Assembly (NCBI RefSeq): GCF_964188315.1
Contig: NC_135655.1
Span: 29,636,001-29,700,000 of the forward strand
Reading direction: 5' to 3'
Length of the DNA stretch: 64,000 nt
Origin: Podarcis muralis
Lineage: Eukaryota
Made by a program: the position numbers and the translations under genes. This document shows, piece after piece, positions 12,050 to 63,400 of the stretch; position 1 is the stretch's first letter; each line of letters begins with the position of its first letter. The notes under the pieces are model-generated. The model saw nothing but the letters and a program-made list of their open reading frames with translations, searched no databases and was not told the DNA's origin.

Positions 12050-15000
12050 TTAAAACAATCGGGCTCCATAACCAAACGTCTGTTTTATGCCCTCAAAGTA
12101 GTATCGTTGCCAGCCCTCCCTTGTTCTCTCTTCTTCGTTGGCTGGGATGCCCCTTCCTTCCAGGCGGATTTCTGTTTCACCAGCTTTGTCGATGAACGTC
12201 AAAGTGATGGTTGCAAAGTGTCCTAAAAGAGCCAAAGAAAAACCCCAACATTCAGCAGTGTGACACAGCCTGGAGAAACACAGCCAGACAAACTATCTGC
12301 TTCTTTCCTGATATGGTTAAGAGAAGAAATCTGCTCTTCTTCCCAAGATTGCAACAGCTGGGAAACACTCAACTCTTAACCAATCTACCCTTTAAATATG
12401 TCATATCCTGTATGATAGGGCAGATTCCCAGTACAGTGGTACCTCGCAAGACGAATGCCTCGCAAGACAAAAAACTCACTAGACGAAAGGGTTTTTTGTT
12501 TTTTGAGCTGCTTCGCAAGACAAATTTCCCTATGGGCTTGCTTCGGAAGACGGAAACGTCTTGCAAGTTTGTTTCCTTTTTCTTAACACCGTTAATACAG
12601 TTGCGACTTGACTTCGAGGAGCAACTCATAGCACGCGGTGTGGTAGCCTTTTTTGAGGTTTTTAAAGACTTTGGTGATTTTTGAAGCTTTTCCAAAACTT
12701 TCTCGACACCGTGCTTCGCAAGACGAAAAAAATCGCAAGACGACAAAACTCGCGGAACGAATTAATTTCGTCTTGCGAGGCACCACTGTAATAAGTACAG
12801 CCAATGCACGAGTTGCCGTACAAGCCAAGCAAAAACATAGCACAACCAAGGCCAAGGCTAGTAACCAACTGGGAAATGCTTGTGCTTTCAAGCATCTTAC
12901 AATTTAATAATGGGCACCTACTGCTAGTACAACATAGTCAGAGTATAGCTGAAGCATATGTCATTTTCTACTTTGTTATATGAAGTAGAATAACTTACCC
13001 TCTGGCCATGTTTTAAATCTCCACTTCATTGCAATCTGCTTCTCAGGAACCTGGAAAGGAAGGAAAGCCTAGTTATCTAGCAGGTATATTTTCATTTGAA
13101 TACCAAGAGAGTGACAGAGATTATACTGAAAAAAGCTGGGGGGGGTGTCAATATTATGTGAGAGTAGCTCAGGGTCTAAATACATATAACGCTTAATGAG
13201 TAATGTGCAACTACATCTCTTTTTTCTATAATTAACAAGCGCAACAGAGCAACTGTTATCAGAACTGCACTGTGCAAAGAAAGGAGGTTCTATCTGTCTG
13301 TCTGTCTAATTCCTCCACCTCCTTTCCCAGTCCAGGACTCAAGGCAGCTTATGCAGATAAAACAGAAATAGCTAAAAACACAATAAAGACAATCATTTAA
13401 AGGTAATGAAATATAAATAAAATAGTGTTTAAAAGATCCATTAAGAAACAACAACAGCAATAAAAACATCACAAAACCAGCCCTTTCCTCAAAATACCAA
13501 CTCCTATTGTAGAGAGATTTATTGAGATCAAAATGATCTAAGTTTAGCTACAGTTCACCAAGCTTGCCTTCATAACATTTCTTCTCTGAACCAGACATGG
13601 TTCAGAAATAACCACAGTTTAGAAGGATGAAGGTTGCTGTGCATACACTGTCTCCTCCCCTCCCCTCCTGCTCTGTAGTGAATAACCTCCAGGATTTCTT
13701 AAACTGATTACCTGTTACATCTAAACCAGGAAAGCATCATTTTCATTCTGACAGTGCAAAGGGGAAGGAGGAAGGAGCATAAAGGTGCAATGCTTGTGCC
13801 TGCCTAATCAAACTGAGTTTGTTATGTCTGAACTCGGCCAATATTATCCATTTGTTTTTTGGAAAAGATGTGTATTTCCACCTAAACCATCAGCAACACA
13901 AAAGAGTCTATCCAATTTTAGACTTGGTAAGGTAGTACAGGCATTAGCATTATTATTACTATTATCATTATCTGTACAACACCCTTCATCCAAAGATCAC
14001 AGGGCAGTTCGCAACATAAATGTTCAGAGCATTACAAAAGAAACAGATCATGGGCTAAAAAGAAGGCACGTCCCAGCTACTGAGCAACAGAAAATGTATT
14101 GTCAACAGTACTTACTAGTTCAGTGAACTCTCCAGTGACACTGCCGTCTAGCAGCTGGAATTTTCCTCCTTTGTCAGCCTCCAAAAAGGCAGGTGAGTGA
14201 GTAAAAGCCTGGACCATCTGCAGAAAAAAAAAAATTATGATCATTATGCATTAAAATGACCATGACTTCCACCCAATCTACTGAAACAACAGAAACAGAT
14301 GCTTGATTCCAGCACTCTGGAATCTGAGTCCTGATTCCAGTACCATCTCCCACTGGGGACGGGGGCACTTTCAAGGATGAAAGTAGCACCTCTTGGCTGC
14401 CACTTCATTTCCAATTAAGCAGAAGCAAATGCTCATCTCGGTGGGAGCTTCTTTGGAAGTAGGTCTCCTGCTGAAAGAACATATAACCCTTCCAGACTGA
14501 GAAGAAACAAGGTGACCCATAATCCTTGAAATATTTCCTAAAGGCCTAGAGGTCGCTTCTGCTGCAGAGTACCAACCACAACACCCTCTGTGTGTGAGCT
14601 AATAGGAGAAACATGGGGAGGACGTTAGTCTGAACAACCAGCAGAGATATTTATAACCAAATCTAATCTAAAAAGTGTACAAGGACTTCTCGACAGAAAA
14701 GGACCTGTAGACAGACCTGCAACTTACCTCTTGTGTGATAAACACTCTATACAGTTCATCTGGAGATGTTAAGAAAACGTCCTTCAAGTTTATCTTGCAA
14801 GTAGGAATTTTGACTCCTATCGATTTGGATTTAAGTGCATTGCCAGCAACTGGTTCAGTGGTCTAAAAATAGAATAAGTTACAATGAAGAACATATATTA
14901 ACTGATAGCTTATTTTGTTAGTTGATTTACAAACTTTTTTAAAAAAAGAACAGCACTCAAAATACAATCTAAAAATTGTGAAAACAATAGAAACTATATG

Positions 15001-18000
15001 CAATACAAATCAGTACAAGCACAACCTAAAAGCCAGATGCAATCAATATGAAACCAGCATAAAAAGCAAGCAAGCGGGGGTGGGGGTGGGAATTGTATAC
15101 ATGTAAACAGCACTGAGGAATGCAGTGTAACACTATGGCGCTCCCAAGACTCCTAAGCCTTGCTGCACTAGCAGAAATCCTTGGGCAGGCTCCCACTAGC
15201 AGAGCTAGTAGCTGAATCCCGCTCCAGCTGTGAGTTAAAAGACATGGGGAAATAAAAATATCTTCACCTGGTAGCTAAAGGTCCACAACGTAGATGCCAG
15301 GCAAGCCTCTGCTGGGAAAGCATTCCATAAATGGGGTGCCACCAAGGAAAATACTCCCTCCCTTGGCCACTTGCCTCATTTTGCTAGGGGCGGGGGGAGA
15401 TTTGGAGCAAAATAATTAATCCCGAACCCTGCTAATAAGATGGCTCATTCCCTGCAGCTGCTGAAAGAGCAAGGCACCAACCTGCAGCCACTTTTCTTCC
15501 TCACTGGACTCCAGTAGTCCCCAATCTTCAAGATACTGCAATCTGTTTTTGTTATACTCCCTCAAGAATTTTGGTCCAATTGTATGCCACAGAATATTCA
15601 CATTCCTATCAAAACTGCTTAGTGCCCAGAGCTACCTCATATGCCACACCACTAAGTCTGCTGCCACTAGGAGTGTAAAGTAGCCCTGTGCCTTATTATT
15701 CATCAGAGCAAAGAAATGTTAACCTATAAAATACACCTGGAATCTTGGGCTCTTACCTTCCGTTCCTCTGCTTTGCGTACAGGCTGAGGTGGGAGCTCTG
15801 ATTGTTCACCATTCACTGTGGGTAAGATCATGCCTTGGGTAAACTCTGAAAGGTATTAAAATCTCATTATTCCATTCAAAGCATCTAGAAAGAAACCACA
15901 TTTCATAACAATCATAGCTGTAAGAAAGCATCATTAAAGGAAGGCAGGATGTCACAGAAAATGGGATAAGAAAGCTACCACACACTTTGATAAATTTATA
16001 ACACTGGAACTTATCAGTTCAGACCTCCAAGAGGATGTACTGAAAGCTATACAAATGCTTTTGAGAGCAGGAAAGAGGGTCAAACAATAATTACATAATA
16101 CAGTGGTACCCCGCAAGACGAACGCCTCGCAAGACGGAAAACCCGCAAGACGAAAGGGTTTTCCATTTTGGAGGCGCTTCGCAAAACGAATTTCCCTATG
16201 GGCTTCCTTCGCAAGACGAAAGCCCATAGGGAAATCTCCTGGACAGCGGGGAAGCGCAACGCGTCTTCCCCACTGTCCTCGGACCTCCTCCGAAGGCTGG
16301 CGGTGGGGCGGAGAGACCTCCTCCCGCAGCCAGGCTTCGGAAGGCTGTAAAGCAGCCCCCCGCGACCCTCTCCCGGCTGGAGAGGTGACGCGCGCCTATG
16401 GCAGCAGCCTCCATAGCCGAGCGTCACCTCTCCAGCCGGGAGAGCACGCGCGGGGCTAAAGCAGCCCCCCGCGACCCTCTCCCAGGTGACGCGCGCCTAT
16501 GGCAGGAACCTCCATAGGCGCGCGTCACCTCTCCAGCCGGGAGAGCGCGCGCGGGGCTAAAGCAGCCCCCCGCGACCCTCTCCCGGCTGGAGAGGTGACG
16601 CGCGCCTATGGAGGCTCCTGCCATAGGCGCGCGTCACCTCTCCAGCCGGGAGAGCACGCGCGGGGCTAAAGCAGCCCCCCGCGACCCTCTCCCAGGTGAC
16701 GCGCGCCTATGGCAGGAGCCTCCATAGGCGCGCGTCACCTCTCCAGCCGGGAGAGCACGCGCGGGGCTAAAGCAGCCCCCCGTGACCCTCTCCCGGCTGG
16801 AGATGTGACGCGCGCCTATGGAGGCTCCTGCCATAGGCGCGCGTCACCTCTCCAGCCGGGAGAGCGCGCGCGGGGCTAAAGCAGCCCCCCGCGACCCTCT
16901 CCCGGCTGGAGATGTGACGCGCGCCTATGGAGGCTCCTGCCATAGGCGCGCGTCACCTCTCCAGCCGGGAGAGCACGCGCGGGGCTAAAGCAGCCCCCCG
17001 CGACCCTCTCCCAGGTGACGCGCACCTATGGCAGGAGCCTCCATAGGCGCGCGTCACCTCTCCAGCCGGGAGAGGGTCGCGGGGGGCTGCTTTAGCCCCG
17101 CGTGCGCTCTCCCGGCTGGAGAGGTGACGCTCGGCTATGGAGGCTCCTGCCATAGGCGCGCGTCACCTCTCCAGCCGGTAGAGGGTCGCGGGGGGGCTAA
17201 AGCAGCCCCCCGCGACCCTCTCCCAGCTGGAGAAGTGACGCTTGACTATGGCAGCAGCCTCTGAAGGCTGCTCCGAAGCCTGGCGGGGGGGGCGGAGAGA
17301 CCTTCTCCCCGCGCCAGCCTTCGGATGCCTGTCCTGAAGACTTGGGGTGGGAGAAGGGTTTTCCTTCCCACCGCCAACATTCAGAATGCTGTTCTGAATG
17401 TTGGCGGTGGGGAGGAAAAACCCTCCTCCCACGCAAGCCCCGGGAACAGAGGGAAAGCGCTGCGCGCCTTCCCCTCTGTTCCCGTACCTGTCCTGAAGGC
17501 TTGCGGTGGGGAGAAAAGCCCTTCTCCGCACCGCCAGCCTGGCAAGCGGTTTCCATAAGAACGCATTAATTGATTTTCAATGCATTCCTATGGGAAACCA
17601 TGCTTCGCAAGACGAAAAACTCGCAGGAAGAAAAAACTTGCGGAACAAATTAATTTCGTCTTGCGAGGCACCACTGTACTATATTAGAGACATGCAGCCT
17701 AAAGTTTGACTGGTAAACTCAGGGCAGGTATATATAATTTTCAGACCACAACTCCAAGTTCTCTAGTGCAGGCATGCACTACTGTGGCCCACAAGGCTTT
17801 TTTCCCCACAGTGATGTGGTGGCAGTCTCCTTGGTGCTACTTGAGACAAATAATCCATAATAATTACTATCAGCACTGAGATGGAAAATGATAATTCTTC
17901 ACATCCTTGAACGGAGTCTTGCCTCACCAGATTTACTTTGGTAGACCAGCAGAGGATGGAGAAGGTCCTTGAGGTATCACAAGTCCTAAGCCATTTAGTG

Positions 18001-21000: not shown

Positions 21001-24000
21001 AAGTTGTAGTTCCAAAACAGCTGGAGGGCCAAGTTTGGCCACGCCTGCATCTAGTTAGACACAGACTGTCTGCTGCTGTGGAACCTACCTTTTTATTTCA
21101 TTTAAAAATTATATTTTTTGGTAAAACAATCTGGCAACATGAGAATGGCATCATACACACGCTTAATGAGTAGTCCAATCCCAGCAGGTTCCTATATTTC
21201 AATGAAAGAACAGGATGTACAGTTCTAGCCAACCCACAGGATTATTTTGAACCACTAGGTGGACGGACGGAGTGAACTCACAAACTGCTGAGATCATAGC
21301 TGTTAAATCTACCCAGCAGAGAAGTAACTTGTGACATGACAGAGACAGATTATACAAACAGATTTCCCCTTTCCCGCTCCTTAAAATACAAGAACTAAAT
21401 TCCAATACATCAGGCTTCTGCTTTGAAAACCAATCTAGATAAAATGTTTCTGTAGAATCTGCATGTAAAAACAAAGAGTGCTTCATAAGTTGAAGATGGC
21501 TATATGTTTCACAGTTGCTTGAGTGCTGCTGCATTAGCATTACATACCCTTGGAAACTACAGCTTGCTCACCACTGCAGAATGAGCTGCTGGCTCACTTC
21601 ATACTGCCTATGTCACTGTTTTTTCTTTTTGGCTCCGCACCCCCCAAGGTTGGGGCAGGAGGACAGAAGAAACTGCTGCTAACTGGAGAGCTCTCCATGG
21701 TTCTAGAGAAGCACACACACCTTCCTCGGATATGAATTAACCATGATGCTCAAAGAGACAGTGCATATTTCCCCTGTGGTTTAATTTAACTGGCAAGTTC
21801 CCAGAACAGGGAACCTACAGTATTTATCCTTCCTCCTTTAAAGCCTCCTGCAGCTGAAAAAATAGCAGCTGCTCACTCATCACAAATTAAGAGCATGGTG
21901 ATCATGTTTCTAGTTGTCTAAAGATGCAGAAGAGCCTGGATAAGGAGCAAAACTGATTGGACTGAAAATCTCAGGAACAGGAAAGACCTGGTAGATATAG
22001 TCACAAAAGGGTAGGACTGGACTTCTTTATACTAATCCTGAAAGCTGTGGGTTGCTACTAGGGATGGAAGAAGATACGGTTTTCTGTTTCACCCTGTATT
22101 TAACGCATGCAGCATTTTCTCCATTCTGCTGCAGTTCATCTTCTGCCAAAACTTACATTATTTGTCTCACTGTGCGCTGTGGTAAAATTATGTAACTTGC
22201 ATATTATAATTACACTGTTGTTACTTTATCCCACCCCATTCATTTCTATGCAAAGGAAACACAATGCAAATGTGGGGTGGTGGTGGCATAATCGATTACG
22301 TACAATTTGCAGGTGGAAAGCAACAGCAAACACTGGTCATATTTGCCAGATTGATATGCATTAAAGACATGAGGCAAATAAGCAAACACTAGCAACTTCT
22401 ACTTGGGTTCATCAGAGGTCTCCAGCATCCCTAAGCGGCTGTTCACAAGAGTCCATACCATAATAAATCAAGATGTAAAGTGCCATTGGCACTTGGTCTT
22501 TGCACTGCTGGCAAAATGCCATATTTACACAAGCCACACTGTGCACAGCAGCTGCTTGAAAATATTGTGCATAGTTCACTCCTTGCCCAGGTCAGTAAGT
22601 GTGGTGGCAATCGCATGAAAAGATTTTCAATAAGAAACAAAAAATAGAACGCTATACATAATAGTAGATGTACATGACCAAGTGACAATATGAAGGCATC
22701 CTGCATCTCCAGGTTTTTCTGGTTCATTTCTATTGGAATAGAAAAATGACTTTCTTACAGCAGCACACAAAAATTATTCTAGTTTTATAATAGTATTATA
22801 ATAATAGTTTATTATTTATACCCTGTCCATCTGGCTGGGTTTCCCCAGCACTCTGTCTCCAATAGTGACTACTGAAAATACATGATGTGATAGCAACAGC
22901 CACCCTCTCTGCTATCAGTGTCCTGCACTCAGGAATACTGCTTCTGTGTTTGGAAGCTCCATTTATATCAAAATTGTTGTCAAATCACCCATGAATTTGT
23001 ATGTGGCAGAATTGCTAGTTTGCTTAAGACAACTTGCGTCACCATTTTTCAAATTAAGACTGATTCCTATCTTGTCATCATTAATTCCACATTAAGGAAG
23101 CAATGAATGAAATCCTCCCCCATTCTCAAAATGCTCCTGGAACAGTTTCCCTGGATACCACCACTTCCTGTCTACCCACTTTCTCCACAACTACCACACT
23201 GCAAATCAGTGTGAAAAGCAATCAGATACAGCAACCCAGCTAAACAAAAAGCATGGCTTTGCATGTCAGAAACACAGTAAGCACAAACGCACCATTAAAA
23301 ATGACAAGGGGCTTCCTATTCTGGAGAGTGCTTCTGCAGCACCAGATTATGATACAGGTGGAGGGGCTGCCTCCCTGTTGCAAACTACTTTTATTCAGCA
23401 GGCACTCGCTGGCTTTGCCAGATGCTGCACCTGGCCCCTAGAAAAGACTGCCAACGTTTTTGTTTGTTTTAACCAGTCCCCAGCTCCCATGCACTTAAGC
23501 GCAGCTTGATCTGAAAGAAGTAGCTAGCGATCATATTTCTTTTTCCATGCCAAAAAGCACCCAAACTCTCACTAGCTGCCCTTCTACAGATCTAGCTGTT
23601 TTGGTTTTTTTAAAGGAGGTTAAACCAGGCCAGGGAGGTTTCTCTATCTCTCCTCACCCCTGTAATCTTTTACCACACTTATTTGAGAGTAAGGTCCACC
23701 GAACCCGAAGGGAAGTGACTCCGGCGCGAACACGCATAAGCGGTGGAGAATCTAGTGTGAAGGGGTCAGAGGCAAGAGACAGGGAGAGAGAAGCAGACAC
23801 GCGTCCCCGCAACCGCGGGGGTGTGGGTGGTTGTGGGTGTGGCGGTGGCAGCACGGCCGCCCTTATTCCCCCAAAGCCCTCAGGGGAAGAGCTGCACACC
23901 CCCCCCAAACACGAGCCACTTCTCCTCCGCCCCCCCCAGCCCCCGCTGCCTTCCCGGCCCCCCTCGCCCACCAGTGCCAGTTGTTGACGTTGGTGGCATC

Positions 24001-24051
24001 CGCGCGCTGCTCCACAATCCAGCGCGGATCTCCCTCTCCCCACTTGGCCAT
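12050..24051 (-). CDS. AHSA1: Activator of Hsp90 ATPase 1 (Aha1), complete CDS, 340 aa
   Basis: Exons (minus): 24051-23972, 19600-19410, 19169-19087, 18829-18712, 15845-15757, 14862-14728, 14217-14116, 13050-12999, 12222-12050. Total 1023 nt, all GT-AG, open frame MAKWGEGDPRWIVEQRADATNVNNWHWTERDAS...WQRYYFEGIKQTFGYGARLF*. Carries the NxNNWHW motif and the C-terminal AHSA1/START-like domain. Confidence 0.98.
12434..12788 (+). mobile_element. Tc1/mariner non-autonomous element, CGCAAGACG subfamily, 355 bp (AHSA1 intron 8)
   Basis: TA|CAGTGGTACCTCG ... CGAGGCACCACTG|TA; repeated subterminal CGCAAGACGA motif; about 120 bp left end and about 80 bp right end shared with the 16101 and 28380 copies. 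Confidence 0.9.
16101..17676 (+). mobile_element. Tc1/mariner non-autonomous element, CGCAAGACG subfamily, 1576 bp, with internal palindromic array (AHSA1 intron 4)
   Basis: TA|CAGTGGTACCCCG ... CGAGGCACCACTG|TA; same ends as the 12434 and 28380 copies; no transposase ORF. Confidence 0.92.
16348..17262. repeat. GC/CpG-rich palindromic minisatellite, units of 109 and 101 bp, about 8.5 copies
   Basis: TAAAGCAG unit starts at 16348, 16457, 16558, 16667, 16768, 16877, 16986, an inverted copy near 17087, and 17198. Each long unit contains a 34-bp inverted repeat around a 9-nt loop. Confidence 0.95.
20912..21047. mobile_element. hAT-type palindromic MITE, 136 bp
   Basis: Perfect TIR CAGGCGTGGCCAAACTT / AAGTTTGGCCACGCCTG; same core as 1087 and 36362; no clear target duplication. 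Confidence 0.8.
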
Positions 24052-26010
24052 CAGCGCCTCGCCGAAGGACTCGCCGCTTCTGCCTCTGCCCGGCTGGCTG
24101 GCTGGCTGGCGAGCGCCCGTCGCCCTCGCTCTCTCGCCGCGCGTCTGGAAGCTACTAGAAGCGCCGCCGGCAGCCGCGCCGCCTCCCAGCTTCCGGCAGC
24201 CGCCGGAGAGCTTCCTTCCGTTGCTCCCCGCCGCCGCCGCTCCTTACTCCCCCAGTACCATAGAGGGTATAAGCGTAACACACAGACACGCGCAGCCTGG
24301 GCAGGGGAGGAAACTGACATGAACACCGAGGGAAGCGGGAGGCACGTTATTGGGGCAGAGTGCATAGACGTAAAAGCAGAGTCTATATGTTGCCTGCCTC
24401 GCTTCTGGGTGCCGCCCTCCTTCTCCTGGAGCAAAAGTGACAGCTCGCTGTGGCAAATCCAGGATTTGAAGCGAAGCCGTGAATTGGCCAGCGGCCGAGT
24501 GTCCACCAGAAACAAAAGCGAGCGGCCTCTCGACAGGCTCTTTCCTACTCAGACCTGTTTTCGCGTGGGAATTAAGTGTTTAAAGACTTGAAGCCGCATC
24601 TACGCCGTCTAAGTGAGCGTCGGGTTGGGGCTGGGGGGGGGTCTAGAATTTCATAATCTCTGCCGGGAAGCATAGCTGTCAACGTTTCCCTTTTTTAAAG
24701 GGAAATTCCTTTATTCCGAATAGGATTCCTCGCAAGAAAAGGGGAAAGTTGACAGCTATGCTGGGAAGTGTCGCTCTATTTTTGGAGAAAATCCAGCTTC
24801 CTTTAACTGAAAGGGAGGAAGTTCACCGCGGAAGTGAAGGACTGCGGTGGTGTGTAACTCTTCGTTTTAATCTCTGCAACTCAGCCTGTGAGGCACGTAA
24901 AGGCCTCGAGAGACACAGGTTCGGACTGGCCTCCCACTGCCATGTCGACGTTCCTTGGCGTGTTTCACCTTGGAGATGCCAAGAGACAGGGAGACGCCGC
25001 CTGCCTGCCGGCATTCATCCATCCCTAACGCTGGGCTTCTTTGGACTACAACTCCCGTCATCCTTGGCTGGGGCTGATGGGAGTTGCAGTGCAAAACCAC
25101 TGAGGGGGTGGGGCAAAGGTTTCCCGCCACGGCGCTGCGGCGTTCGATCCAATGCCCGGGCTGTGTGCGTAGGCTTAACATTTGCGCGCCACTTTAACCT
25201 TTCCTTACTTCTGTGGCTCCTCCCTGCTTCTGGTTCCTCGCCTTGCCCCTTGTCTGGGCCGGAGCCCTTTCACTCCTAACCTAACGAAGCAACACAGCCC
25301 TTTTCAAAAGAAGCGGCGCGTAAACGGAGTTTTGCCTCCGCCCATGACCCGTAGTGACAGAAGCGGAGCGGGGGAGGAAGGAGAGCGAGAAAGGCTCGGC
25401 GCTGAGGGCAGCCCGGCTTCCTGCCTGGGAAGCGCGGCACAGCCTCTCCCGATGTAAAGCGTCGGCCTGAGAAACGCCGCCGCGCTGCGCTCTGTAGTCG
25501 AAACCGATGGCTGGGGAACCAGCTGGAAAACTACCTCTCCCGTGATGCTTTTCGAAAGCAACCGCCTTTCTCTTTCCCTGCCTGAGGAGCCGAGGAACAC
25601 GGCCCGCAGAAGGGCGCAGGGCCCAGCGCCGAGCATGGACGGGGGACCTGCGTGGTGCTGATCGGATCCCTGCCCGGCTGGTCGTCGCTCCCCGCCCTGG
25701 AGGCCCTGCTTCTCCGAGGGTAGGCGGCTGTCTTCTCCCTCCGTCGCGGGAACGGGGTCTCCGGCGCTTCCTCTGGCGGGGGGCTTTCTGAGCGAGGAGG
25801 CGCAAGACCGTGTCCTGAGGCAAGTGGAGATGCACCGGGCTCCTGCTTTCTGCCTCGCCCCTTCCTGGCGCTTGGGCTTGGCCAGAAGAGGTCCCAGCCG
25901 GTTATCTCATGCCCACCCCCACCCCGCGCCAGCAACATTGGCTGCTGCTATTTATACGGGGTCATGGACACCGGGATCTTCCGCCCCTGGGGACGCTGCC
26001 GCCTGAGGCA
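23790..26010. promoter_or_regulatory. CpG island and bidirectional promoter of AHSA1 and VIPAS39
   Basis: Dense CpG/GC region covering AHSA1 exon 1 and the upstream interval. Contains an HSE-like element (24142-24161), GGGAAATTCC (24700-24709) and CGGAAGT (about 24829). Candidate VIPAS39 non-coding exon donors are TAA|GTGAGC (24613) and AGG|GTAGGC (25720); which is used cannot be determined from sequence. Confidence 0.85.
24142..24161 (-). promoter_or_regulatory. Heat shock element (HSF1 site) candidate upstream of AHSA1
   Basis: Minus strand cTTCtaGTAgcTTCcaGACg: four alternating nGAAn units, two perfect and two with one mismatch, about 90-110 nt upstream of the ATG. Aha1 is a known heat-inducible co-chaperone. 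Confidence 0.6.
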
Positions 26011-27370: not shown

Positions 27371-30300
27371 ATGAACAGAATAAAGGTTGATGAGGAAGAA
27401 TACTGGCACAGTTCCAAGTGTAAAGCATTTACGTTTGATGATGAAGATGATGAGCTCTTTCAGGTACAGTTCCTAGTCAGAACAAACTGAGAATGCACTA
27501 TGCAGTGTCTCCTTGCCTGAAATGTTAAGGAAAGCAGAAATCTGCATATAGTGTAGTCATTTTAAAATTATTGATAGATATCTTTCCATTGAAGGAATTG
27601 TGAAAGTAAAATTGAGGAATTGCTATACAGTGGTACCTTGGGTTACGTTACCTTTGGGTAACGTAATTTCGAGTTACAAATGCGGCAAACCCAGAAATAT
27701 ATACTTCCGGGTTTCGCCGCATCCACAGAAGCGGCGCCTCCGCATGCGGACTTTTCGGGGTAAGTACGGACCCTGGGACAAATTAAGTTCGTATCTGGAG
27801 GATGCACTGTATTTATATGAGCAGGAAGTATCATGCATGATTGAATGTGTACACTTCACAAGATATGTGGCACAGAACTGGGATTCCTGATCATCTCATT
27901 CTTCACTCATTAGCAGAACACGTTTCTAGCCCTTGTGGTTGTGAAGATGTGCTTGAAAGTGAGCTTGCATCTGCAGGTTCAGAAAATTGGTGTTGTGCAG
28001 AAGCATATTTCCCTACATCATAGCCTCCAATAGTCCTTACTCCAGATATATATTTTAGTCTTTTCTTGCCACATCATTTTTTCAAAGACCTATTTTCCTG
28101 CTACTAAATTGTTCCCTGCCAAACCATTTTAATGTCTTATAAAAGTTGAAAAATGGGTACCCAATAAAGCAACGTAATAGTGCTGCAGGGCAAATAGGCC
28201 TTATTTTAAATGAGGTGTGAACTTGTCATATAACATTCTTTCACAATTTGCATCTGGTATATAAGGATTTGTTTGACTTTTTGTGGGTGGCATGTGTCTA
28301 TAAAACTTTTATCTACATTTTGAAATGAGTATTTTAGATTTTAAAAACTATTTAGAGGTCTTTTGTTGAGTAAGTGGTACAGTGGTACCCCGCAAGACGA
28401 ACGCCTCGCGAGACGAAAAACTCGCAAAACGAAAGGTTTTTTTCGTTTTCGAGTTGCCTCGCAAGACGAATTTCCCTATGGGCTTGCTTCGCAAAACGAA
28501 GCTTGCCCCGGGGACAGCGGGTCTTCTCTTTTGAAGCAAGGGGCGGCGGGGAGATCGCTTCTCCCCACCGCCCCTTGCTTCAAAAGAGGTCTGCCCCCGG
28601 ACCTCTTTTGAAGCAAGGGGCTGCGGGGAGATCGCTTCTCCCGGTGCTCCGAAGCGGGGTGGGGGGGGCGGGAACACCTGCCCCAGCCGCCGGGCTTCGT
28701 AGCGCTGCTGCGAAGCCGGGCGGGGGGCGGGAACACCTGCCCCAGCCACCCCGCTTCGGAACGCTGCTCCGAAGCGGGGTGGGGGGGGCGGGAACACCTG
28801 CCCCAGCCGCCGGGCTTCGTAGCGCTGCTGCGAAGCCGGGCGGGGGGCGGGAACACCTGCCCCAGCCACCCCGCTTCGGAACGCTGCTCCGAAGCGGGGT
28901 GGGGGGGGCGGGAACACCTGCCCCAGCCGCCGGGCTTTGTAGCGCTGCTGCGAAGCCGGGCGGGGGGCGGGAACACCTGCCCCAGCCACCCCGCTTCGGA
29001 ACGCTGCTCCGAAGCGGGGTGGGGGGGGCGGGAACACCTGCCCCAGCCGCCGGGCTTCGTAGCGCTGCTGCGAAGCCGGGCGGGGGGCGGGAACACCTGC
29101 CCCAGCCACCCCGCTTCGGAACGCTGCTCCGAAGCGAGGTGGGGGGGGGCGGGAACACTTGCCCCAGCCACCGGGCTTCGTAGCGCTGCTGCGAAGCCGG
29201 GCGGGGGGCGGGAACACCTGCCCCAGCCACCCCGCTTCGGAACGCTGCTCCGAAGTGGGGTGGGGGGGGCGGGAACACTTGCCCCAGCCACCGGGCTTCG
29301 TAGCGCTGCTGCGAAGCCGGGCGGGGGGCGGGAACACCTGCCCCAGCCACCCCGCTTCGGAACGCTGCTCCGAAGCGGGGTGGGGGGGGCGGGAACACTT
29401 GCCCCAGCCACCGGGCTTCGTAGCGCTGGTGCGAAGCTGGGCGGGGGGGGGGGCGGGAACACCTTCTGAAGGCGGGCGGGGGGCGAAAGTCTTTGTCCCC
29501 CCTGCCTGCCTTCCCAGGGGCTTTTAAATCGCCCCGGACAGCGGAGAACTCCTCCGCTGTCCCGGGGCGATTTTAAAATGCCGCCCGCCAGCATTTTAAG
29601 ATCGCCCGGACAGCGGAGAAGTCCTCCGCTGTCCCAGGGTTTTTTAAAATGCTGGGGGTGGGAAGAAAAGCCCTTGTCCCCCCCCCCCCCAGCCTTCAGA
29701 AGAGGTCCGGGGACAGTCTGTCCCCGGACCTGGTCTGAAGGCGGTTTCCCTAGGAACGCATTACTTGATTTTCAATGCATTCCTATGGGAAACCGTGCAT
29801 CGCAAGACGAAAAAACCGCAAGACGAAGAGACTTGCGGAACGAATTAATTTCGTCTTGCGAGGCACCACTGTATATAAATTTTGATGGATAAATAAATTC
29901 AGCTTGTGCACAAACATAGAATACATCTGTTCTTGGGATACCGGTTCTTTAGAATGAAAGTGTACAGTCTATCTGGATGGAATAGGGCTTGCCTTCATTT
30001 TCACTTTGGTTTTGTTCATAGCTGAAGGAGTCAAAACGAACAGTGAACAGCCTCCGAGATATTGTAGATGATGACGATGATCTTGAGAAGTTCAGCTGGA
30101 GTGGGGAGCCTGTGGGCAGTAAGTGGAGCAGAATGTTTTTGCATCTATCACCCATTCTTTGAATCTGAATTTGATTATTGCTGCCCTCTGTCAAGAAAAA
30201 TCTCATTAGAGCTACACCTACTAGGAAATATGGCCTAGTGAGGTTTAGTATGCTTAATGTTGAGCAGGAAAAGTGTCTAATAGTTTCATACATTACCACA

Positions 30301-57301: not shown

Positions 57302-59895
<2,594 letters not shown>

Positions 59896-59912
59896 GTCCC
59901 CTGCCAGCCCCG

Positions 59913-59947
59913 AGCAGCGGCAGCAGCAGCAGCAGCAGCAGCAGCAA
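59913..59947 (+). repeat. (CAG)n tract, read as (CUG)n in the SAMD15 5' UTR
   Basis: gcagcggcagcagcagcagcagcagcagcagcaac, about 20 nt upstream of the SAMD15 ATG. Confidence 0.9.
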
Positions 59948-60287
59948 CGGCGCCGCTATGGCAACGCGTCCTTCCTGGAACGGTCTCCATGGCTACCAGC
60001 GCTTCCGGGAAGTGCGCCGCCTTTCCTTTCCCCATCCCGCCCGCCAGAGAAGCCTCTGTAGCAGCCTGACGAAAGCGGCCCTTTCGAAAGCGGCCGGCTT
60101 TAGGCGGGAACTACGTAGGGCGGAGGCCCGAGAGGAGGAGGAGGAGGAGAAGGAGGCTGCGGTGGTGGTCGCGGGTGAGGGAGGGGGACGGGAGCGGCTA
60201 CGATCGCCGCTCGGCTCTTTCCGGCTTTGCTCGGCTCCGCTCGACCCTCCCCGGCTGCTTTCGGGCGGCTCAGCCCTCCGCCTTCCC

Positions 60288-60459
60288 ATGTCGGACGTGC
60301 TGGCCGCCGCCGCCGCCGTGGGCACCCGCTTCGAACCCTCCGCGGCCAACGGCTTGGGAGGAGGAGGCGGGGACGGCGGCGGCGACAGTTGCCCCGCTGG
60401 CGGGGCTGGAGACGACGAGAAGAAACCGCGCCTCACGCCTCCGCTGCCGCCTTCCTCAG
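60288..60459 (+). CDS. TMED8: TMED8 (GOLD-domain protein), first coding exon only
   Basis: ATG TCG GAC (MSDVLAAAAAVG...PPLPPSS) ends at the phase-1 donor CAG|GTACTT. It is head-to-head with SAMD15 in a CpG island, and vertebrate TMED8 begins MSD. The exon is poorly conserved, so identity rests mainly on synteny. No later exon was recognised in the window. Confidence 0.72.
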
Positions 60460-63400
60460 GTACTTCAGGGGCCTCCCTCGCGGCTGCGGGGTGGAGATAG
60501 CGGGGCCGGGGGCAAAAGAAAACGCCGTCTCTGTCAGGGCCTTCCCCCTCCCCGGGGACTGACGGAGCGCGGGAGGAGGGCCCGTGTGGCTCGCCACCTC
60601 CCTCGCTCCCTGGAAGGTCCCCTGACAGCGGCGCTGCAGGCAGAAATCCAACAGGTGCCCCCTCCCTGTGGCACGCGTGTGCGCCACCTGTTGAACTTCT
60701 GCCGCTCGGGGAGCTTCTTGGCATTCAATAAGCAAAACGAGGGGAGCGGCGAGGTCGCGACGGGAGGCGTTTACTCTGGGGGAAACCGGGTTGGGGCGCG
60801 CGGCGAGGAGCCCGGGCTGAGGCGCTGGGGGTTGGGGCTGCTCTGCTGGCGCTGCAGGTGTTCGAGGCGAGGCGTCGCGGAAGCCTGAAAAGAGTCATCC
60901 TGAGGCCGGCTGGGGGTCCTGAAAAGACAGTTGCTGGCCGCCTCCTGGTCAGTAGAAAGAACAATCCATTTCTGTTTCCAGACAGACCCTCCTAGACTTC
61001 CGTTTTAAGTATCCAGTCGTCCTTGGTTTGATGCCTTCGAAAACTCGAGGTGCAAGTGAATCGCTCGAGGGAGTATGAAGACCATGGGGTTTTCTTCTGA
61101 ATAAATATTTGTAGGATTGGACTGTCATTGTAGTTCCGTGGTTTTTCCTAAGGAACTCAGCGCATCCTTTCCTCCCAGGGACATGGGTTAAAAAGGACCC
61201 CTACCCTTTTGGGATTTTCGCCTTTGCACGCCATTTTCCATGACAACATAGTGCTTAAGCTACAAGTAATAATTAAAGTTAAGTTTACATGCGTCCTTTC
61301 ACTATCGTATACATCTGTAGATGTGCTAGCTCCATCCATACCAGAATTTATGCCTTGAGTGTTGGCAGATTACGCATTTTTCTGCAATTGTCGTTGCTTG
61401 GACAAGTGGTTTACTGGTTGGATAAATTGTCACCTTTTCTTTATGTTGATCAGTTGAAACCAAGGTACAAGGAAGAGTCATGCATATTACAGAAGACCAG
61501 GGTATTAGGTGTGTTGGGGCAAGGCAGAATTGCGGCATGAAAGACTTCCTGAAGATGGGCTGCCCATATTGATGTTCTTCACAATTGTGGTATCCCAGTA
61601 GCTAGAAGTGGAACCAAAGAGCATAAACTCATTTCCATTGTAACAGAAAGATCAGCGTTAAAAATAACTGGATATCACAGAATCACTTTAATAAGGAGAT
61701 CACCAAGAACTTAATCAGTACTGTGTAGAACAGTATTGAACAGGTGTCAGAACAAAATCATAATACTGCATTATATGTTTTGCAGTAACCATCAATGTTT
61801 TATTTATCAATCAAGAAATAGTGTGGTGGAGCATAATATACTGCAGTATTGCTTGTTTGATGAGCTTGTTTGATATTCTTGTTTGTCAGGAGCTAGCCTT
61901 TAATAGCTTTTGTTCCCTTGGGTTACTGCATTGTTTAATTTTTCCCTCAGCATACCAGTTGTTTTCTAATTGGGCTAATGCACCTTGGTGTAACTGTTGC
62001 ATCAGGTAGCAGACAGTAGTGGCATTGCCATGAACTTCTTTGCTTTCTTGTTTTATGCACCAGACACTTCACTTTTAAAATCTCAAGTGTAATAACACAG
62101 CATAGAGAGGTTTAAGTGAAAGCAATGGAAATGTGTTGTTGACTAATCATTAAAATGGAGGATCCTAGAAATCAGTGGTAGATTTAAAAGTATACACCCT
62201 GTGCACAGACTTAAGACTCTGTGCAGCTTAGCCCCCACCCCAGTTGTTGTTATTATTTATTAGTCACTTAGAAAAAGTGACCTACAAACAGTAGAAATAA
62301 TGAAGTCAATTACAATTAGCACAGCCAATAAATACCTTAAAAAACTGAAAATCTATACAAATAAAAGGCAGGTCTAAGCAGATCCTGCCCCAGAAAATGA
62401 GGCCACAAATACTTCAAAACCCCATTAGTATACATTGGTATCTGAGAGGATACCTTTGATCAGAATATCCCTATTTCAAATCTAGTTTCTGCCATCTGAA
62501 TTCAACGGTAGACATAAGGAAGCCATAGACTTAATCTCTCACCTTCAGTTATCAGCAGGATAATTTCTGACAATTGTTTGTAAGGATCACAGCAAAATAA
62601 TGTATGTGGAAGTGCTGTGTAAATGCCAAGTCCCCCCCACCACTGAATAAGCAGTGCCTAATGTTAGTTAGCTCCCACATATCAATATCAATATGCAAAG
62701 GATGTTGAGTAATAATAATAAGTGAAATATAAAAATGGAATCATCTGTTGCTACAGTATTGGGTGTCAGTGCTGGCTTTGAGACAAGCTGGTGATTCTCC
62801 TAGATGGAGATTGGAGTTCTGGACTTTTTTCTCCTGTGTTTGCAAAGCTAATGCACTTCTTTTCTTCTTAAAAACACACAACTCTCACTGTGCAGCTGTG
62901 ACAACCTTAAAGTAAATACCTGCTTCTGTTCTGGTTCCCTATTATTGGTTACCTTCTATAACTGTGGGAGGAAGTCTCCCTCACCACACTTCTTTCCCCT
63001 TTATTTATTTATGGGTTAATTGTGGTGATCCTCAGAACTTCTAAGCCATTGATGGGTTTGGATTCTAAATAATTTGTTTGTTTGTTTTCAATCAAAATCC
63101 TGCACGAAAGGGAAGCCCCCAATCATATTATGCAAACAATATTGGAGCCCCCCACACCTGTACTATAATTTCTGCTCAACAGCTTCTCTCAAAACCCGGA
63201 CAGTTGCTGCCTACACATTTTCAAGTCTTATCTTCACATCCTTAAGAGCTAAAAATGTACATTTTAAAAAAATGAATACAAACAAAACCAGCTTGAAATT
63301 GTTAGCATGCTGAATACTGTACTTGATGCCAAAATCTATACTGGCTTAAGGAAATTGTAGAATAGCTTTACTGTATTTGTAGTACGGTACAGTATCCTTA

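What the first reader, a model, noticed from the sequence alone, without database searches (positions are those of the whole stretch)
16348..17262. Palindromic array whose spacers occur in both orientations (shufflon-like pattern)
Seen: long units carry a 34-bp perfect inverted repeat, CTCTCCCGGCTGGAGAGGTGACGCGCGCCTATGG / CCATAGGCGCGCGTCACCTCTCCAGCCGGGAGAG. The 9-nt loop is AGGCTCCTG (F) or its reverse complement CAGGAGCCT or a variant (R), in the order R,R,F,R,F,F,R,F,R (16402, 16503, 16612, 16713, 16822, 16931, 17032, 17141, 17252). The second spacer is also flipped once (17075-17105). Block 17068-17170 is an inverted copy of 16381-16483 and shares a private variant (AGCCGAGC 16415 / GCTCGGCT 17129). 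Short 101-bp units always carry an R loop, giving a 210-bp higher-order repeat. Inference: the array grows and rearranges by fold-back or template switching, or by cruciform resolution, not by simple slippage, and may be somatically invertible.
Basis: partly seen in the sequence, partly recalled or inferred. Interest (0 to 1): 0.72.

Follow-up and report, generated by a model that had tools for sequence, protein, structure and literature searches.

The report
Flipped hairpin loops in transposon-borne repeat
A 0.9-kb array of hairpin-forming repeats inside a very common lizard cut-and-paste transposon has some hairpin loops reversed, which looks like a frozen record of a few rare copying errors later spread by ordinary repeat duplication, not a working genetic switch.

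Summary
All nine loops sit at the stated coordinates in the order R,R,F,R,F,F,R,F,R, one spacer loop is flipped, 17063-17195 is an inverted copy of 16356-16488, and all three short units carry R.

The context is new. The array fills the 7-nt loop of an older 13-bp hairpin inside a TA-flanked non-coding DNA transposon (MITE, 16101-17676). Its ends occur thousands of times in this lizard genome. Two more family copies lie in the window, one with a different hairpin array and no flips. This scan has noted many such hairpin-array transposons elsewhere in this genome.

A map of orientation markers shows that the string needs only about three inversion-type events. These are one loop-only flip (units 3, 5 and 6 are near-identical copies), one block inversion, and one arm/loop discordance in unit 9. 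Tandem duplication in 109, 210 and 319 bp registers explains the rest. Every breakpoint lies inside a stem, as expected for replication template switching or inverted-repeat "flip-flop".

Illumina reads from another individual show both loop forms among paralogous units genome-wide, so the forms are real. Whether this locus still switches could not be tested. Nothing supports a shufflon-like or somatic switch. This is a new member of known kinds, of modest interest.

The parts
16099..16100 (.). TA target-site duplication, left
   Evidence: TA directly flanks the terminal inverted repeats of all three family copies in the window.
16101..16221 (+). Left chassis of the MITE: a 22-nt terminal inverted repeat (CAGTGGTACCCCGCAAGACGAA) and five subterminal CGCAAGACGAA-type repeats
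   Evidence: Read depth here is about 9,400 against about 1.3 in unique flanks. Most family reads diverge after 16221 (tables 2 and 7).
16222..16328 (.). Interior hairpin modules to the left of the parental hairpin
   Evidence: The single-strand DNA fold shows serial hairpins. Read depth falls stepwise inward.
16329..16341 (+). Left arm of the parental hairpin (GCCAGGCTTCGGA)
   Evidence: It is a perfect 13-nt inverted repeat with 17272-17284.
16340..16347 (+). 8-bp direct repeat GAAGGCTG bounding the array, left copy
   Evidence: Array-less relatives join 16339 to 17263 with 8 shared letters (table 5).
16348..17262 (+). Array of 8.7 double-hairpin units (109 or 101 bp), 71% G+C, CpG observed/expected 0.88
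16612..16620 (+). Loop of unit 3, F orientation: a loop-only flip in an otherwise direct unit
   Evidence: Marker map.
16822..16830 (+). Loop of unit 5, F orientation. The unit is a copy of unit 3 with 3 differences.
16931..16939 (+). Loop of unit 6, F orientation. The unit is a copy of unit 3 with 1 difference.
17063..17195 (-). Inverted block, the reverse complement of 16356-16488. Both spacer halves, the spacer loop, the main loop and the private arm variant are all reversed together.
   Evidence: (pair I4, 95%).
17198..17262 (+). Truncated unit 9, direct again. The variant arm lies LEFT of an R-type loop, whereas in unit 1 it lies to the right.
17263..17270 (+). 8-bp direct repeat GAAGGCTG, right copy
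   Evidence: (table 5).
17272..17284 (-). Right arm of the parental hairpin
17285..17545 (.). Interior hairpin modules to the right of the array
17546..17676 (-). Right chassis and terminal inverted repeat of the MITE
17677..17678 (.). TA target-site duplication, right
12434..12788 (+). Second copy of the same MITE family, 355 bp, without an array
28380..29871 (+). Third copy of the family, carrying a different 120-bp hairpin array (28645-29452). All 26 of its asymmetric loops and cores keep one orientation.

Best explanation
The array is a young, CpG-rich minisatellite that grew inside the loop of a pre-existing hairpin in a non-autonomous TA-inserting DNA transposon (a MITE of the Tc1/mariner-pogo type). 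Each unit holds two hairpins. One has a 34-bp stem and a 9-nt loop. The other is a spacer hairpin with a stem of about 7-9 bp and a 5-nt loop.

Because the array is close to its own reverse complement, a polymerase that stalls in a stem can switch to the complementary strand, copy across a loop, and switch back in the opposite arm. That reverses only what lies between the two switch points. About three such events happened here:
- a loop-only flip that created the F unit type;
- an inverted copy of at least 133 bp near the 3' end of the array;
- a loop-versus-arm discordance in the last unit.

The resulting unit types were then multiplied by ordinary tandem duplication (slippage or unequal exchange) in registers of one, two and three units. 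The orientation string is therefore an inherited record and not a switch, and it needs no function.

Shown here: the anatomy, the marker orientations, the position of breakpoints within stems, the near-identity of like units, the transposon context and its high copy number, and the existence of both loop forms in another individual's reads. Inferred: template switching as the chemistry, the order of events, and neutrality.
For: - Marker map: every asymmetric marker is '+' from 16348 to 17030 except the loops at 16611, 16821 and 16930. All markers are '-' in 17070-17179, then '+' again from 17198.
- Units 3, 5 and 6 differ by 1-3 nt. Units 2, 4 and 7 share the same 8-bp deletion and differ by 1-2 nt. 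Tandem Repeats Finder reports periods 109, 210 and 319.
- The spacer loop is direct in 8 of 9 cases, which points to direct duplication as the main mode of growth.
- The array sits between perfect 13-nt arms and 8-bp direct repeats. Array-less relatives give the joint 16339>17263.
- The parental loop AGGCTGCT is the reverse complement of the edge-unit loop.
- All three copies have a TA duplication and terminal inverted repeats, and there is no Pfam hit in the element.
- Depth is about 9,400 over the transposon ends and about 20-190 over array bins, against about 1.3 in the flanks.
- Reads laid on the F loops carry the R form in 17/73, 24/27 and 25/46 cases (table 4), so both forms exist genome-wide.
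- The sister array at 28645-29452 has 26 loops or cores and no flip, so flipping is rare.
- CpG observed/expected is 0.88 against 0.28-0.42 in the background.
- Loop inversion by template switching is documented: 69 loop-only inversions in rRNA hairpins, with loops of up to 7-8 nt (PMC8794818). [quoted passage not shown]
Against: - No read or contig spans this particular array, so its structure in other individuals, and even independent confirmation of the exact unit order, is missing.
- With perfect arms, a loop flip leaves no footprint. Template switching therefore cannot be told apart from other inverted-repeat-mediated routes.
- F-type units occur at other loci too. That fits either an old flip that spread with the array or recurrent flipping.
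- The count of three events is a parsimony minimum drawn from only nine units.
Confidence: 0.68

Rival explanations
1. Flipping is recurrent and continuing. The loops invert at an appreciable rate in the germ line, or even in the soma, so orientation is hypervariable between alleles. This would be a nuclear counterpart of the flip-flop 'minute inversions' of chloroplast hairpins.
For: - Both loop forms occur in long-arm units elsewhere in the genome (table 4).
- Unit 9 compared with units 1 and 8 needs a second loop-versus-arm change within the variant lineage.
- F and R are still exact reverse complements.
- The arms are long (34 bp) and perfect, and the unit is very stable as a hairpin at -61 kcal/mol.
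Against: - In the six interior units, orientation tracks unit type perfectly: 3 of 3 short units are R and 3 of 3 long standard units are F.
- The sister array has 0 flips in 26 loops or cores.
- The spacer loop flips only as part of the block.
- No locus-specific polymorphism was seen, though none could have been seen with these data.
Confidence: 0.17
2. The flips come from recombination or repair between the inverted arms and not from replication template switching. Candidates are cruciform or hairpin processing, or fold-back priming at a break, for instance during gap repair after transposon excision.
For: - All breakpoints lie in stems.
- The array's right junction is an inverted copy of the neighbouring parental sequence, as fold-back priming would produce.
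- Chloroplast small inversions of 5-50 bp bounded by 11-24 bp inverted repeats are attributed to stem-loop-mediated recombination (cited in PMC12928735).
- Hairpin-mediated fold-back inversions are documented in yeast (PMC7467729).
Against: A 9-bp spacer is too short for two duplex arms to synapse, and cutting a cruciform gives hairpin-capped breaks and not an inversion (both from established knowledge). The sequence alone does not discriminate between the routes.
Confidence: 0.25
3. The whole array grew by repeated fold-back doubling ('rolling hairpin'), so that loop orientation alternates by construction.
For: A long F unit followed by a short R unit forms a larger palindrome about the spacer. 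Arms 16578-16639 and 16694-16755 are 62 nt long and 100% complementary (pair I14).
Against: - Fold-back doubling would also alternate the spacer loop and the two unlike spacer halves. These are direct in 8 of 9 and 7 of 8 cases.
- R units keep the same left and right spacer halves as F units, so only the loop is reversed.
Confidence: 0.04
4. The pattern is an assembly or consensus artefact of a palindromic repeat.
For: No independent contig or read spans the array. Contig pieces laid on it carry 5-10 differences and come from paralogues (table 8).
Against: - Both loop forms, and both long and short arms, are present in raw Illumina reads of another individual (table 4).
- The flips are exact reverse complements.
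- The inverted block carries a private variant consistently.
- Flank contigs of two individuals run into the transposon ends, with 0-2 differences in the window's flanks (table 8).
Confidence: 0.05
5. It is a shufflon-like programmed inversion system driven by a site-specific recombinase.
For: None beyond the presence of segments in both orientations.
Against: - It lies in a vertebrate genome, inside a non-coding transposon present in thousands of copies.
- There is no protein family hit in the element.
- The inverted pieces are 9-nt loops and encode nothing.
Confidence: 0.01

Closest known systems
Tandem-repeat-containing MITEs (DTC84 of the clam Donax trunculus and pearl-type elements; PMC3879986) and the foldback transposon Tetris of Drosophila virilis (PMC4079207)
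   Same: A non-autonomous transposon 'cassette' with conserved ends carries an internal array of tandem repeats. Repeat variants sit in a definite order, and palindromes in the repeats are thought to drive length changes. The transposon spreads the repeats around the genome.
   Different: Here the ends are of the TA-inserting Tc1/mariner-pogo type. Each unit is almost wholly two hairpins. The array sits in the loop of an older hairpin, and some loops are reversed. Reversed loops are not mentioned in the one abstract I read (DTC84); for Tetris I saw only the start of the abstract.
Loop inversions by short-range template switching in replication (PMC8794818; PMC5453318)
   Same: The loop of a perfect hairpin is replaced by its reverse complement while the stems stay intact, in a single event with switch points inside the stems.
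   Different: Those cases are single hairpins in rRNA or microRNA genes, mostly with 4-nt loops. Here the loop is 9 nt between 34-bp arms in a tandem DNA repeat, and the product was then copied by duplication.
Minute 'flip-flop' inversions in chloroplast hairpins (summarised in PMC12928735: 5-50 bp inversions bounded by 11-24 bp inverted repeats)
   Same: A short spacer between inverted repeats is found in both orientations, and the stems are unchanged.
   Different: That system is an organelle genome with its own recombination machinery and documented recurrence between close relatives. Here the genome is nuclear, and recurrence is not shown.
Shufflon of IncI plasmids (Rci recombinase and sfx sites; from general knowledge)
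   Same: Only that DNA segments occur in both orientations.
   Different: The array has no recombinase, no specific crossover sites, and no coding segments whose ends are exchanged. The host is a vertebrate. It is not a member and does not work like one.
Flip/flop terminal hairpins of parvoviruses and AAV (from general knowledge)
   Same: An asymmetric loop within a palindrome exists in two orientations that are reverse complements.
   Different: That flip arises by hairpin transfer at a molecular end during rolling-hairpin replication. Here the hairpins are internal to a chromosome, and the spacer markers contradict rolling-hairpin growth.

Membership tests
Non-autonomous DNA transposon (MITE) of the TA-inserting Tc1/mariner-pogo superfamily | Terminal inverted repeats | tested here: met
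   The 22-nt ends match at 20 of 22 positions, and the same ends occur on three elements in the window.
Non-autonomous DNA transposon (MITE) of the TA-inserting Tc1/mariner-pogo superfamily | TA target-site duplication | tested here: met
   TA flanks both ends of all three copies.
Non-autonomous DNA transposon (MITE) of the TA-inserting Tc1/mariner-pogo superfamily | No transposase gene; high copy number | tested here: met
   There is no Pfam hit in the element's ORFs. Terminal depth is about 9,400 against about 1.3 in the flanks in raw reads.
Non-autonomous DNA transposon (MITE) of the TA-inserting Tc1/mariner-pogo superfamily | An autonomous partner whose transposase binds these ends (this would decide between Tc2, pogo and Tigger) | not testable with these tools
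   No search of this genome or of a repeat library was available. Earlier notes of this scan call the family Tc2-like or Tigger-like, without a check.
Tandem-repeat-containing MITE | An internal array of tandem repeats between conserved flanking modules, with array-less or differently filled relatives | tested here: met
   The array-less joint appears in reads.
Template-switch loop inversion | The loop is replaced by its exact reverse complement, with unchanged perfect stems | tested here: met
Template-switch loop inversion | The event arises during replication by two strand switches | not testable with these tools
   Perfect stems leave no footprint, so this needs experiment or ancestral reconstruction across many copies.
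Shufflon / programmed invertible DNA | A dedicated site-specific recombinase encoded nearby | tested here: not met
   There is no protein family hit in the element and none among the window's larger ORFs scanned.
Shufflon / programmed invertible DNA | Both orientations of the same segment present within one individual or population at this locus | tested here: inconclusive
   Reads on the array are dominated by paralogues, and unique-locus coverage is about 1.3x.
Higher-order repeat (HOR) satellite | A multi-monomer block repeated with higher identity than neighbouring monomers | tested here: met
   Like units are 97-99% identical while neighbouring units differ by the loop and an 8-bp indel. 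However, three registers (109, 210, 319 bp) coexist, with only 2-4 copies each.

The most novel reading that the evidence does not exclude
The several hundred copies of this double-hairpin unit in the lizard genome flip their 9-nt loops recurrently in the germ line. Orientation would then be a fast-evolving, homoplasious character, and this family would be a natural vertebrate reporter for the rate and strand bias of short template-switch mutations, as chloroplast hairpins are in plants.
Probability: 0.15. Interest if true: 0.55.

Novelty: new member of a known kind. Interest (0 to 1): 0.28.

Why it matters
The array is a clean, easily read example of two known mutational processes acting together in a vertebrate nuclear genome: stem-bounded inversion of a hairpin loop, and tandem duplication. 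It lies inside a transposon family that breeds hairpin arrays.

It has no sign of function. Its value is as material. Hundreds of near-identical perfect hairpins with an asymmetric loop could be used to count template-switch events once long reads or a full genome search are applied.

It also carries a warning for annotation. Such arrays are CpG-rich (observed/expected 0.88) and could be mistaken for CpG islands or regulatory devices.

Tried and rejected
- **Locus-specific reads.** Four runs were laid on 15800-18000. The array is swamped by paralogous copies, and no contig or read bridges it. Neither polymorphism at this locus nor the exact unit order could be checked.
- **Orthologous site in the related organism B.** Its flank contigs stop at 16094 and restart at 17677 without entering the transposon ends. 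This hints at an empty or diverged site, but no joint was listed, so the point is unresolved.
- **Rfam scan of the whole window.** No match.
- **Pfam scan.** No families for the ORFs inside the element. Among the larger window ORFs there was only a sub-threshold SAM-domain fragment.
- **Public metagenome contigs.** The long hairpin pattern found nothing. A shorter 10+10 palindrome found seven single, non-arrayed sites in unrelated contigs. I took these as chance palindromes and did not open them, and one is labelled a human-gut metagenome contig.
- **Earlier findings by sequence and by words on loop orientation.** Both were blank.
- **Literature search by the transposon's terminal sequence.** Only cloning primers came up. 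No paper on lizard hairpin-array transposons was found in the held library.
- **Nested hAT-type insertion with an 8-bp target duplication.** I considered this and set it aside. The inserted piece has no terminal inverted repeats, and its ends are inverted copies of the parental loop.
- **Rolling-hairpin growth.** I considered and rejected this because the spacer markers are direct.
Full report

Yes. The sequence at 16348-17262 is a tandem array with reported periods of 109, 210 and 319 bp. The loops read CAGCAGCCT, CAGGAACCT, AGGCTCCTG, CAGGAGCCT, AGGCTCCTG, AGGCTCCTG, CAGGAGCCT, AGGCTCCTG, CAGCAGCCT.

F and R are exact reverse complements and differ at 7 of 9 aligned positions, so an inversion and not point mutation relates them. 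The arm core occurs 16 times in the 64-kb window, all within the array, against 0.01 expected. The arms are a perfect 34-nt inverted repeat in unit 3. In the other units they carry one or two mismatches or an 8-bp deletion in the left arm.

The spacer loop TAAAGC is direct eight times and reversed once, at 17089. The inverted block is real and slightly larger than stated: 16356-16488 against 17063-17195, 133 nt, 95% (pair I4). It shares the private arm variant. All three short units (2, 4, 7) carry R.

**2. What surrounds it?**

The array lies inside a transposon. The 22-nt sequence beginning CAGTGGTACC occurs six times in the window as three inverted pairs: 12434/12788, 16101/17676 and 28380/29871. 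Each pair is flanked by TA on both sides.

The first copy is 355 bp and has no array. The third copy carries a different 120-bp hairpin array. The ends carry several subterminal CGCAAGACGAA-type repeats. No ORF in the element matches a protein family, and Rfam finds nothing in the window.

Raw Illumina reads of another individual of the same species give a depth of about 9,400 over the element's ends, against about 1.3 over the unique flanks. That means thousands of copies. The array bins reach about 20-190, so the unit itself is multi-copy (table 2). I estimate several hundred units genome-wide, but this is rough.

Flank contigs of two individuals run about 20 nt into both ends of the element, with 0-2 differences in the window's flanks. 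The insertion is therefore present in both (table 8). Earlier notes of this scan describe many transposons of this family with hairpin arrays elsewhere in the same lizard genome. The general phenomenon has thus been found before on other DNA, and only the loop-orientation pattern is particular to this finding.

**3. Where in the element did the array arise?**

The array is bounded by the 8-bp direct repeat GAAGGCTG (16340-16347 and 17263-17270). Just outside that lies a perfect 13-nt inverted repeat (16329-16341 and 17272-17284).

Reads and contigs from related copies join 16339 directly to 17263, skipping 923 bp with 8 shared letters. This joint is seen in 29 reads of X24, one contig of X15 and two contigs of X1. 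Contigs of X1 also continue after 16347 with the sequence found at 17271 onward (tables 5 and 7).

The parental state is therefore a hairpin with 13-bp arms and a 7-nt loop, and the array fills that loop. The parental loop sequence (AGGCTGCT) is the reverse complement of the loop of the two edge units (CAGCAGCCT). The last 12 nt of the array form an imperfect inverted copy of the parental sequence that follows. From this I infer that the array was seeded by fold-back or template-switch copying at that loop.

**4. How many inversions does the string need?**

I mapped every marker that is not its own reverse complement: the two unlike spacer halves, the spacer loop, the main loop, the private arm variant, the 8-bp deletion and a G-to-T arm variant.

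- From 16348 to 17030 everything is in one orientation, except the main loops at 16611, 16821 and 16930.
- From 17070 to 17179 every marker is reversed together.
- From 17198 the orientation is direct again.

Units 3, 5 and 6 (F) differ from one another by 1-3 nt. Units 2, 4 and 7 (R) share the same deletion and differ by 1-2 nt. The three F loops are therefore one flip copied by duplication. The block is a second event. Unit 9 has the variant arm to the left of an R-type loop while unit 1 has it to the right, which needs a third event: a second loop flip or an arm-to-arm conversion.

All switch points fall inside stems. Everything else is tandem duplication, and the spacer markers confirm that duplication was direct. 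This rules out growth by repeated fold-back doubling, which would alternate those markers.

**5. Is flipping frequent?**

The evidence leans against it, but the test is weak.

- In the six interior units, orientation follows unit type perfectly.
- The sister array in the third copy has 7 + 6 loops and 13 cores, all in one orientation.
- On the other side, both loop forms occur among paralogous units. Reads laid on the F loops of units 3, 5 and 6 carry the R form in 17/73, 24/27 and 25/46 cases (table 4: a C put in before the loop and one base left out after it).
- The number of F-type reads on unit 3 exceeds what this locus alone could give at about 1.3x coverage.

F-type units therefore exist elsewhere. 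That fits either an old flip that spread with the array or recurrent flipping. The reads also show that both forms are real sequence in an independent animal and not a product of the assembler. Nothing spans this locus's array, so polymorphism or somatic switching here remains untested.

**6. Mechanism**

The unit is an extremely stable hairpin as single-stranded DNA: -61 kcal/mol for unit 3. The whole interior of the element folds into serial hairpins.

Replication through such DNA is expected to stall. Short-range template switching, with a switch to the complementary strand in one arm and a return in the other, replaces a loop by its reverse complement and leaves perfect stems untouched. 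This outcome is documented: 69 loop-only inversions were found in rRNA hairpins, including 7-8-nt loops, plus a microRNA case (PMC8794818). [quoted passage not shown]

The same outcome is known as 'flip-flop' small inversions in chloroplast hairpins, where it is attributed to recombination in the stem (summarised in PMC12928735). With a 9-bp spacer, synapsis of two duplex arms is sterically implausible (general knowledge), so I favour template switching. The sequence itself cannot decide. Array growth by slippage or unequal exchange is standard minisatellite behaviour.

The high CpG content (observed/expected 0.88 against 0.28-0.42 around it) and the 97-100% identity of like units indicate a young array, or possibly an unmethylated one.

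**7. Comparison with known systems**

The carrier belongs with the tandem-repeat-containing MITEs (DTC84 and pearl-type elements, PMC3879986; Tetris, PMC4079207). These have a conserved cassette, an internal array, ordered variants and palindromes in the repeats. The loop reversals belong with template-switch loop inversions and chloroplast minute inversions.

The shufflon comparison fails on every defining feature: no recombinase, no crossover sites, no coding segments, and a vertebrate host.

I found no paper in the held library describing these lizard elements. Absence from that library does not prove that they are undescribed in repeat databases, which I could not query.

**8. Verdict**

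This is a new member of known kinds: a transposon-borne hairpin minisatellite whose loop-orientation string records about three stem-bounded inversion events followed by tandem duplication. I see no evidence of function or of ongoing switching. Interest is modest at 0.28. The open possibility is that loop flipping is recurrent across the family, which would make it a useful natural reporter of template switching.

Noticed in passing
window 16289-16341 and 17272-17325: Two hairpin modules flank the array. Within each module the arms mismatch at one position. The right arm of the left module pairs perfectly with the left arm of the right module, and the G-rich cores of both modules are in direct orientation. 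The perfectly kept hairpin is therefore the one across the linker where the array was born, and not the one across the cores.
   Followed up: partly
window 28645-29452: The third family copy carries a 120-bp array at 98% identity, built as arm-core-arm'-loop twice. Arms pair across the loops with compensating differences between the two half-units. All 26 loops and cores are in one orientation.
   Followed up: partly
window 16101-16221, 12434-12530, 28380-28500: The left end of each family copy has four to five direct CGCAAGACGAA-type subterminal repeats at a spacing of about 16 nt, while the right end has fewer. They are probably transposase binding sites, and the asymmetry between ends is conserved.
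   Followed up: no
window 15800-16094 and 17677-18000 in run X13 (organism B): The related species' flank contigs stop just short of the transposon on both sides instead of running about 20 nt into it, as in the two individuals of organism A. The site may be empty in that species.
   Followed up: partly
window 24000-26000 and 59000-61000: These are two further G+C-rich stretches (0.61 and about 0.54) without tandem repeats and without the transposon ends. An ORF at 59164-59895(-) gives a sub-threshold SAM-domain match (E 0.0014, below Pfam's cut-off), perhaps an exon with a CpG island.
   Followed up: no
window 16522, 16732, 16841, 16950: At the 11th base of the right arm, many or most paralogous reads carry C where this array has G: 171 of 219, 34 of 83, 33 of 38 and 23 of 28 reads. 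The genome-wide majority unit therefore differs from this locus in its stem (table 3).
   Followed up: no
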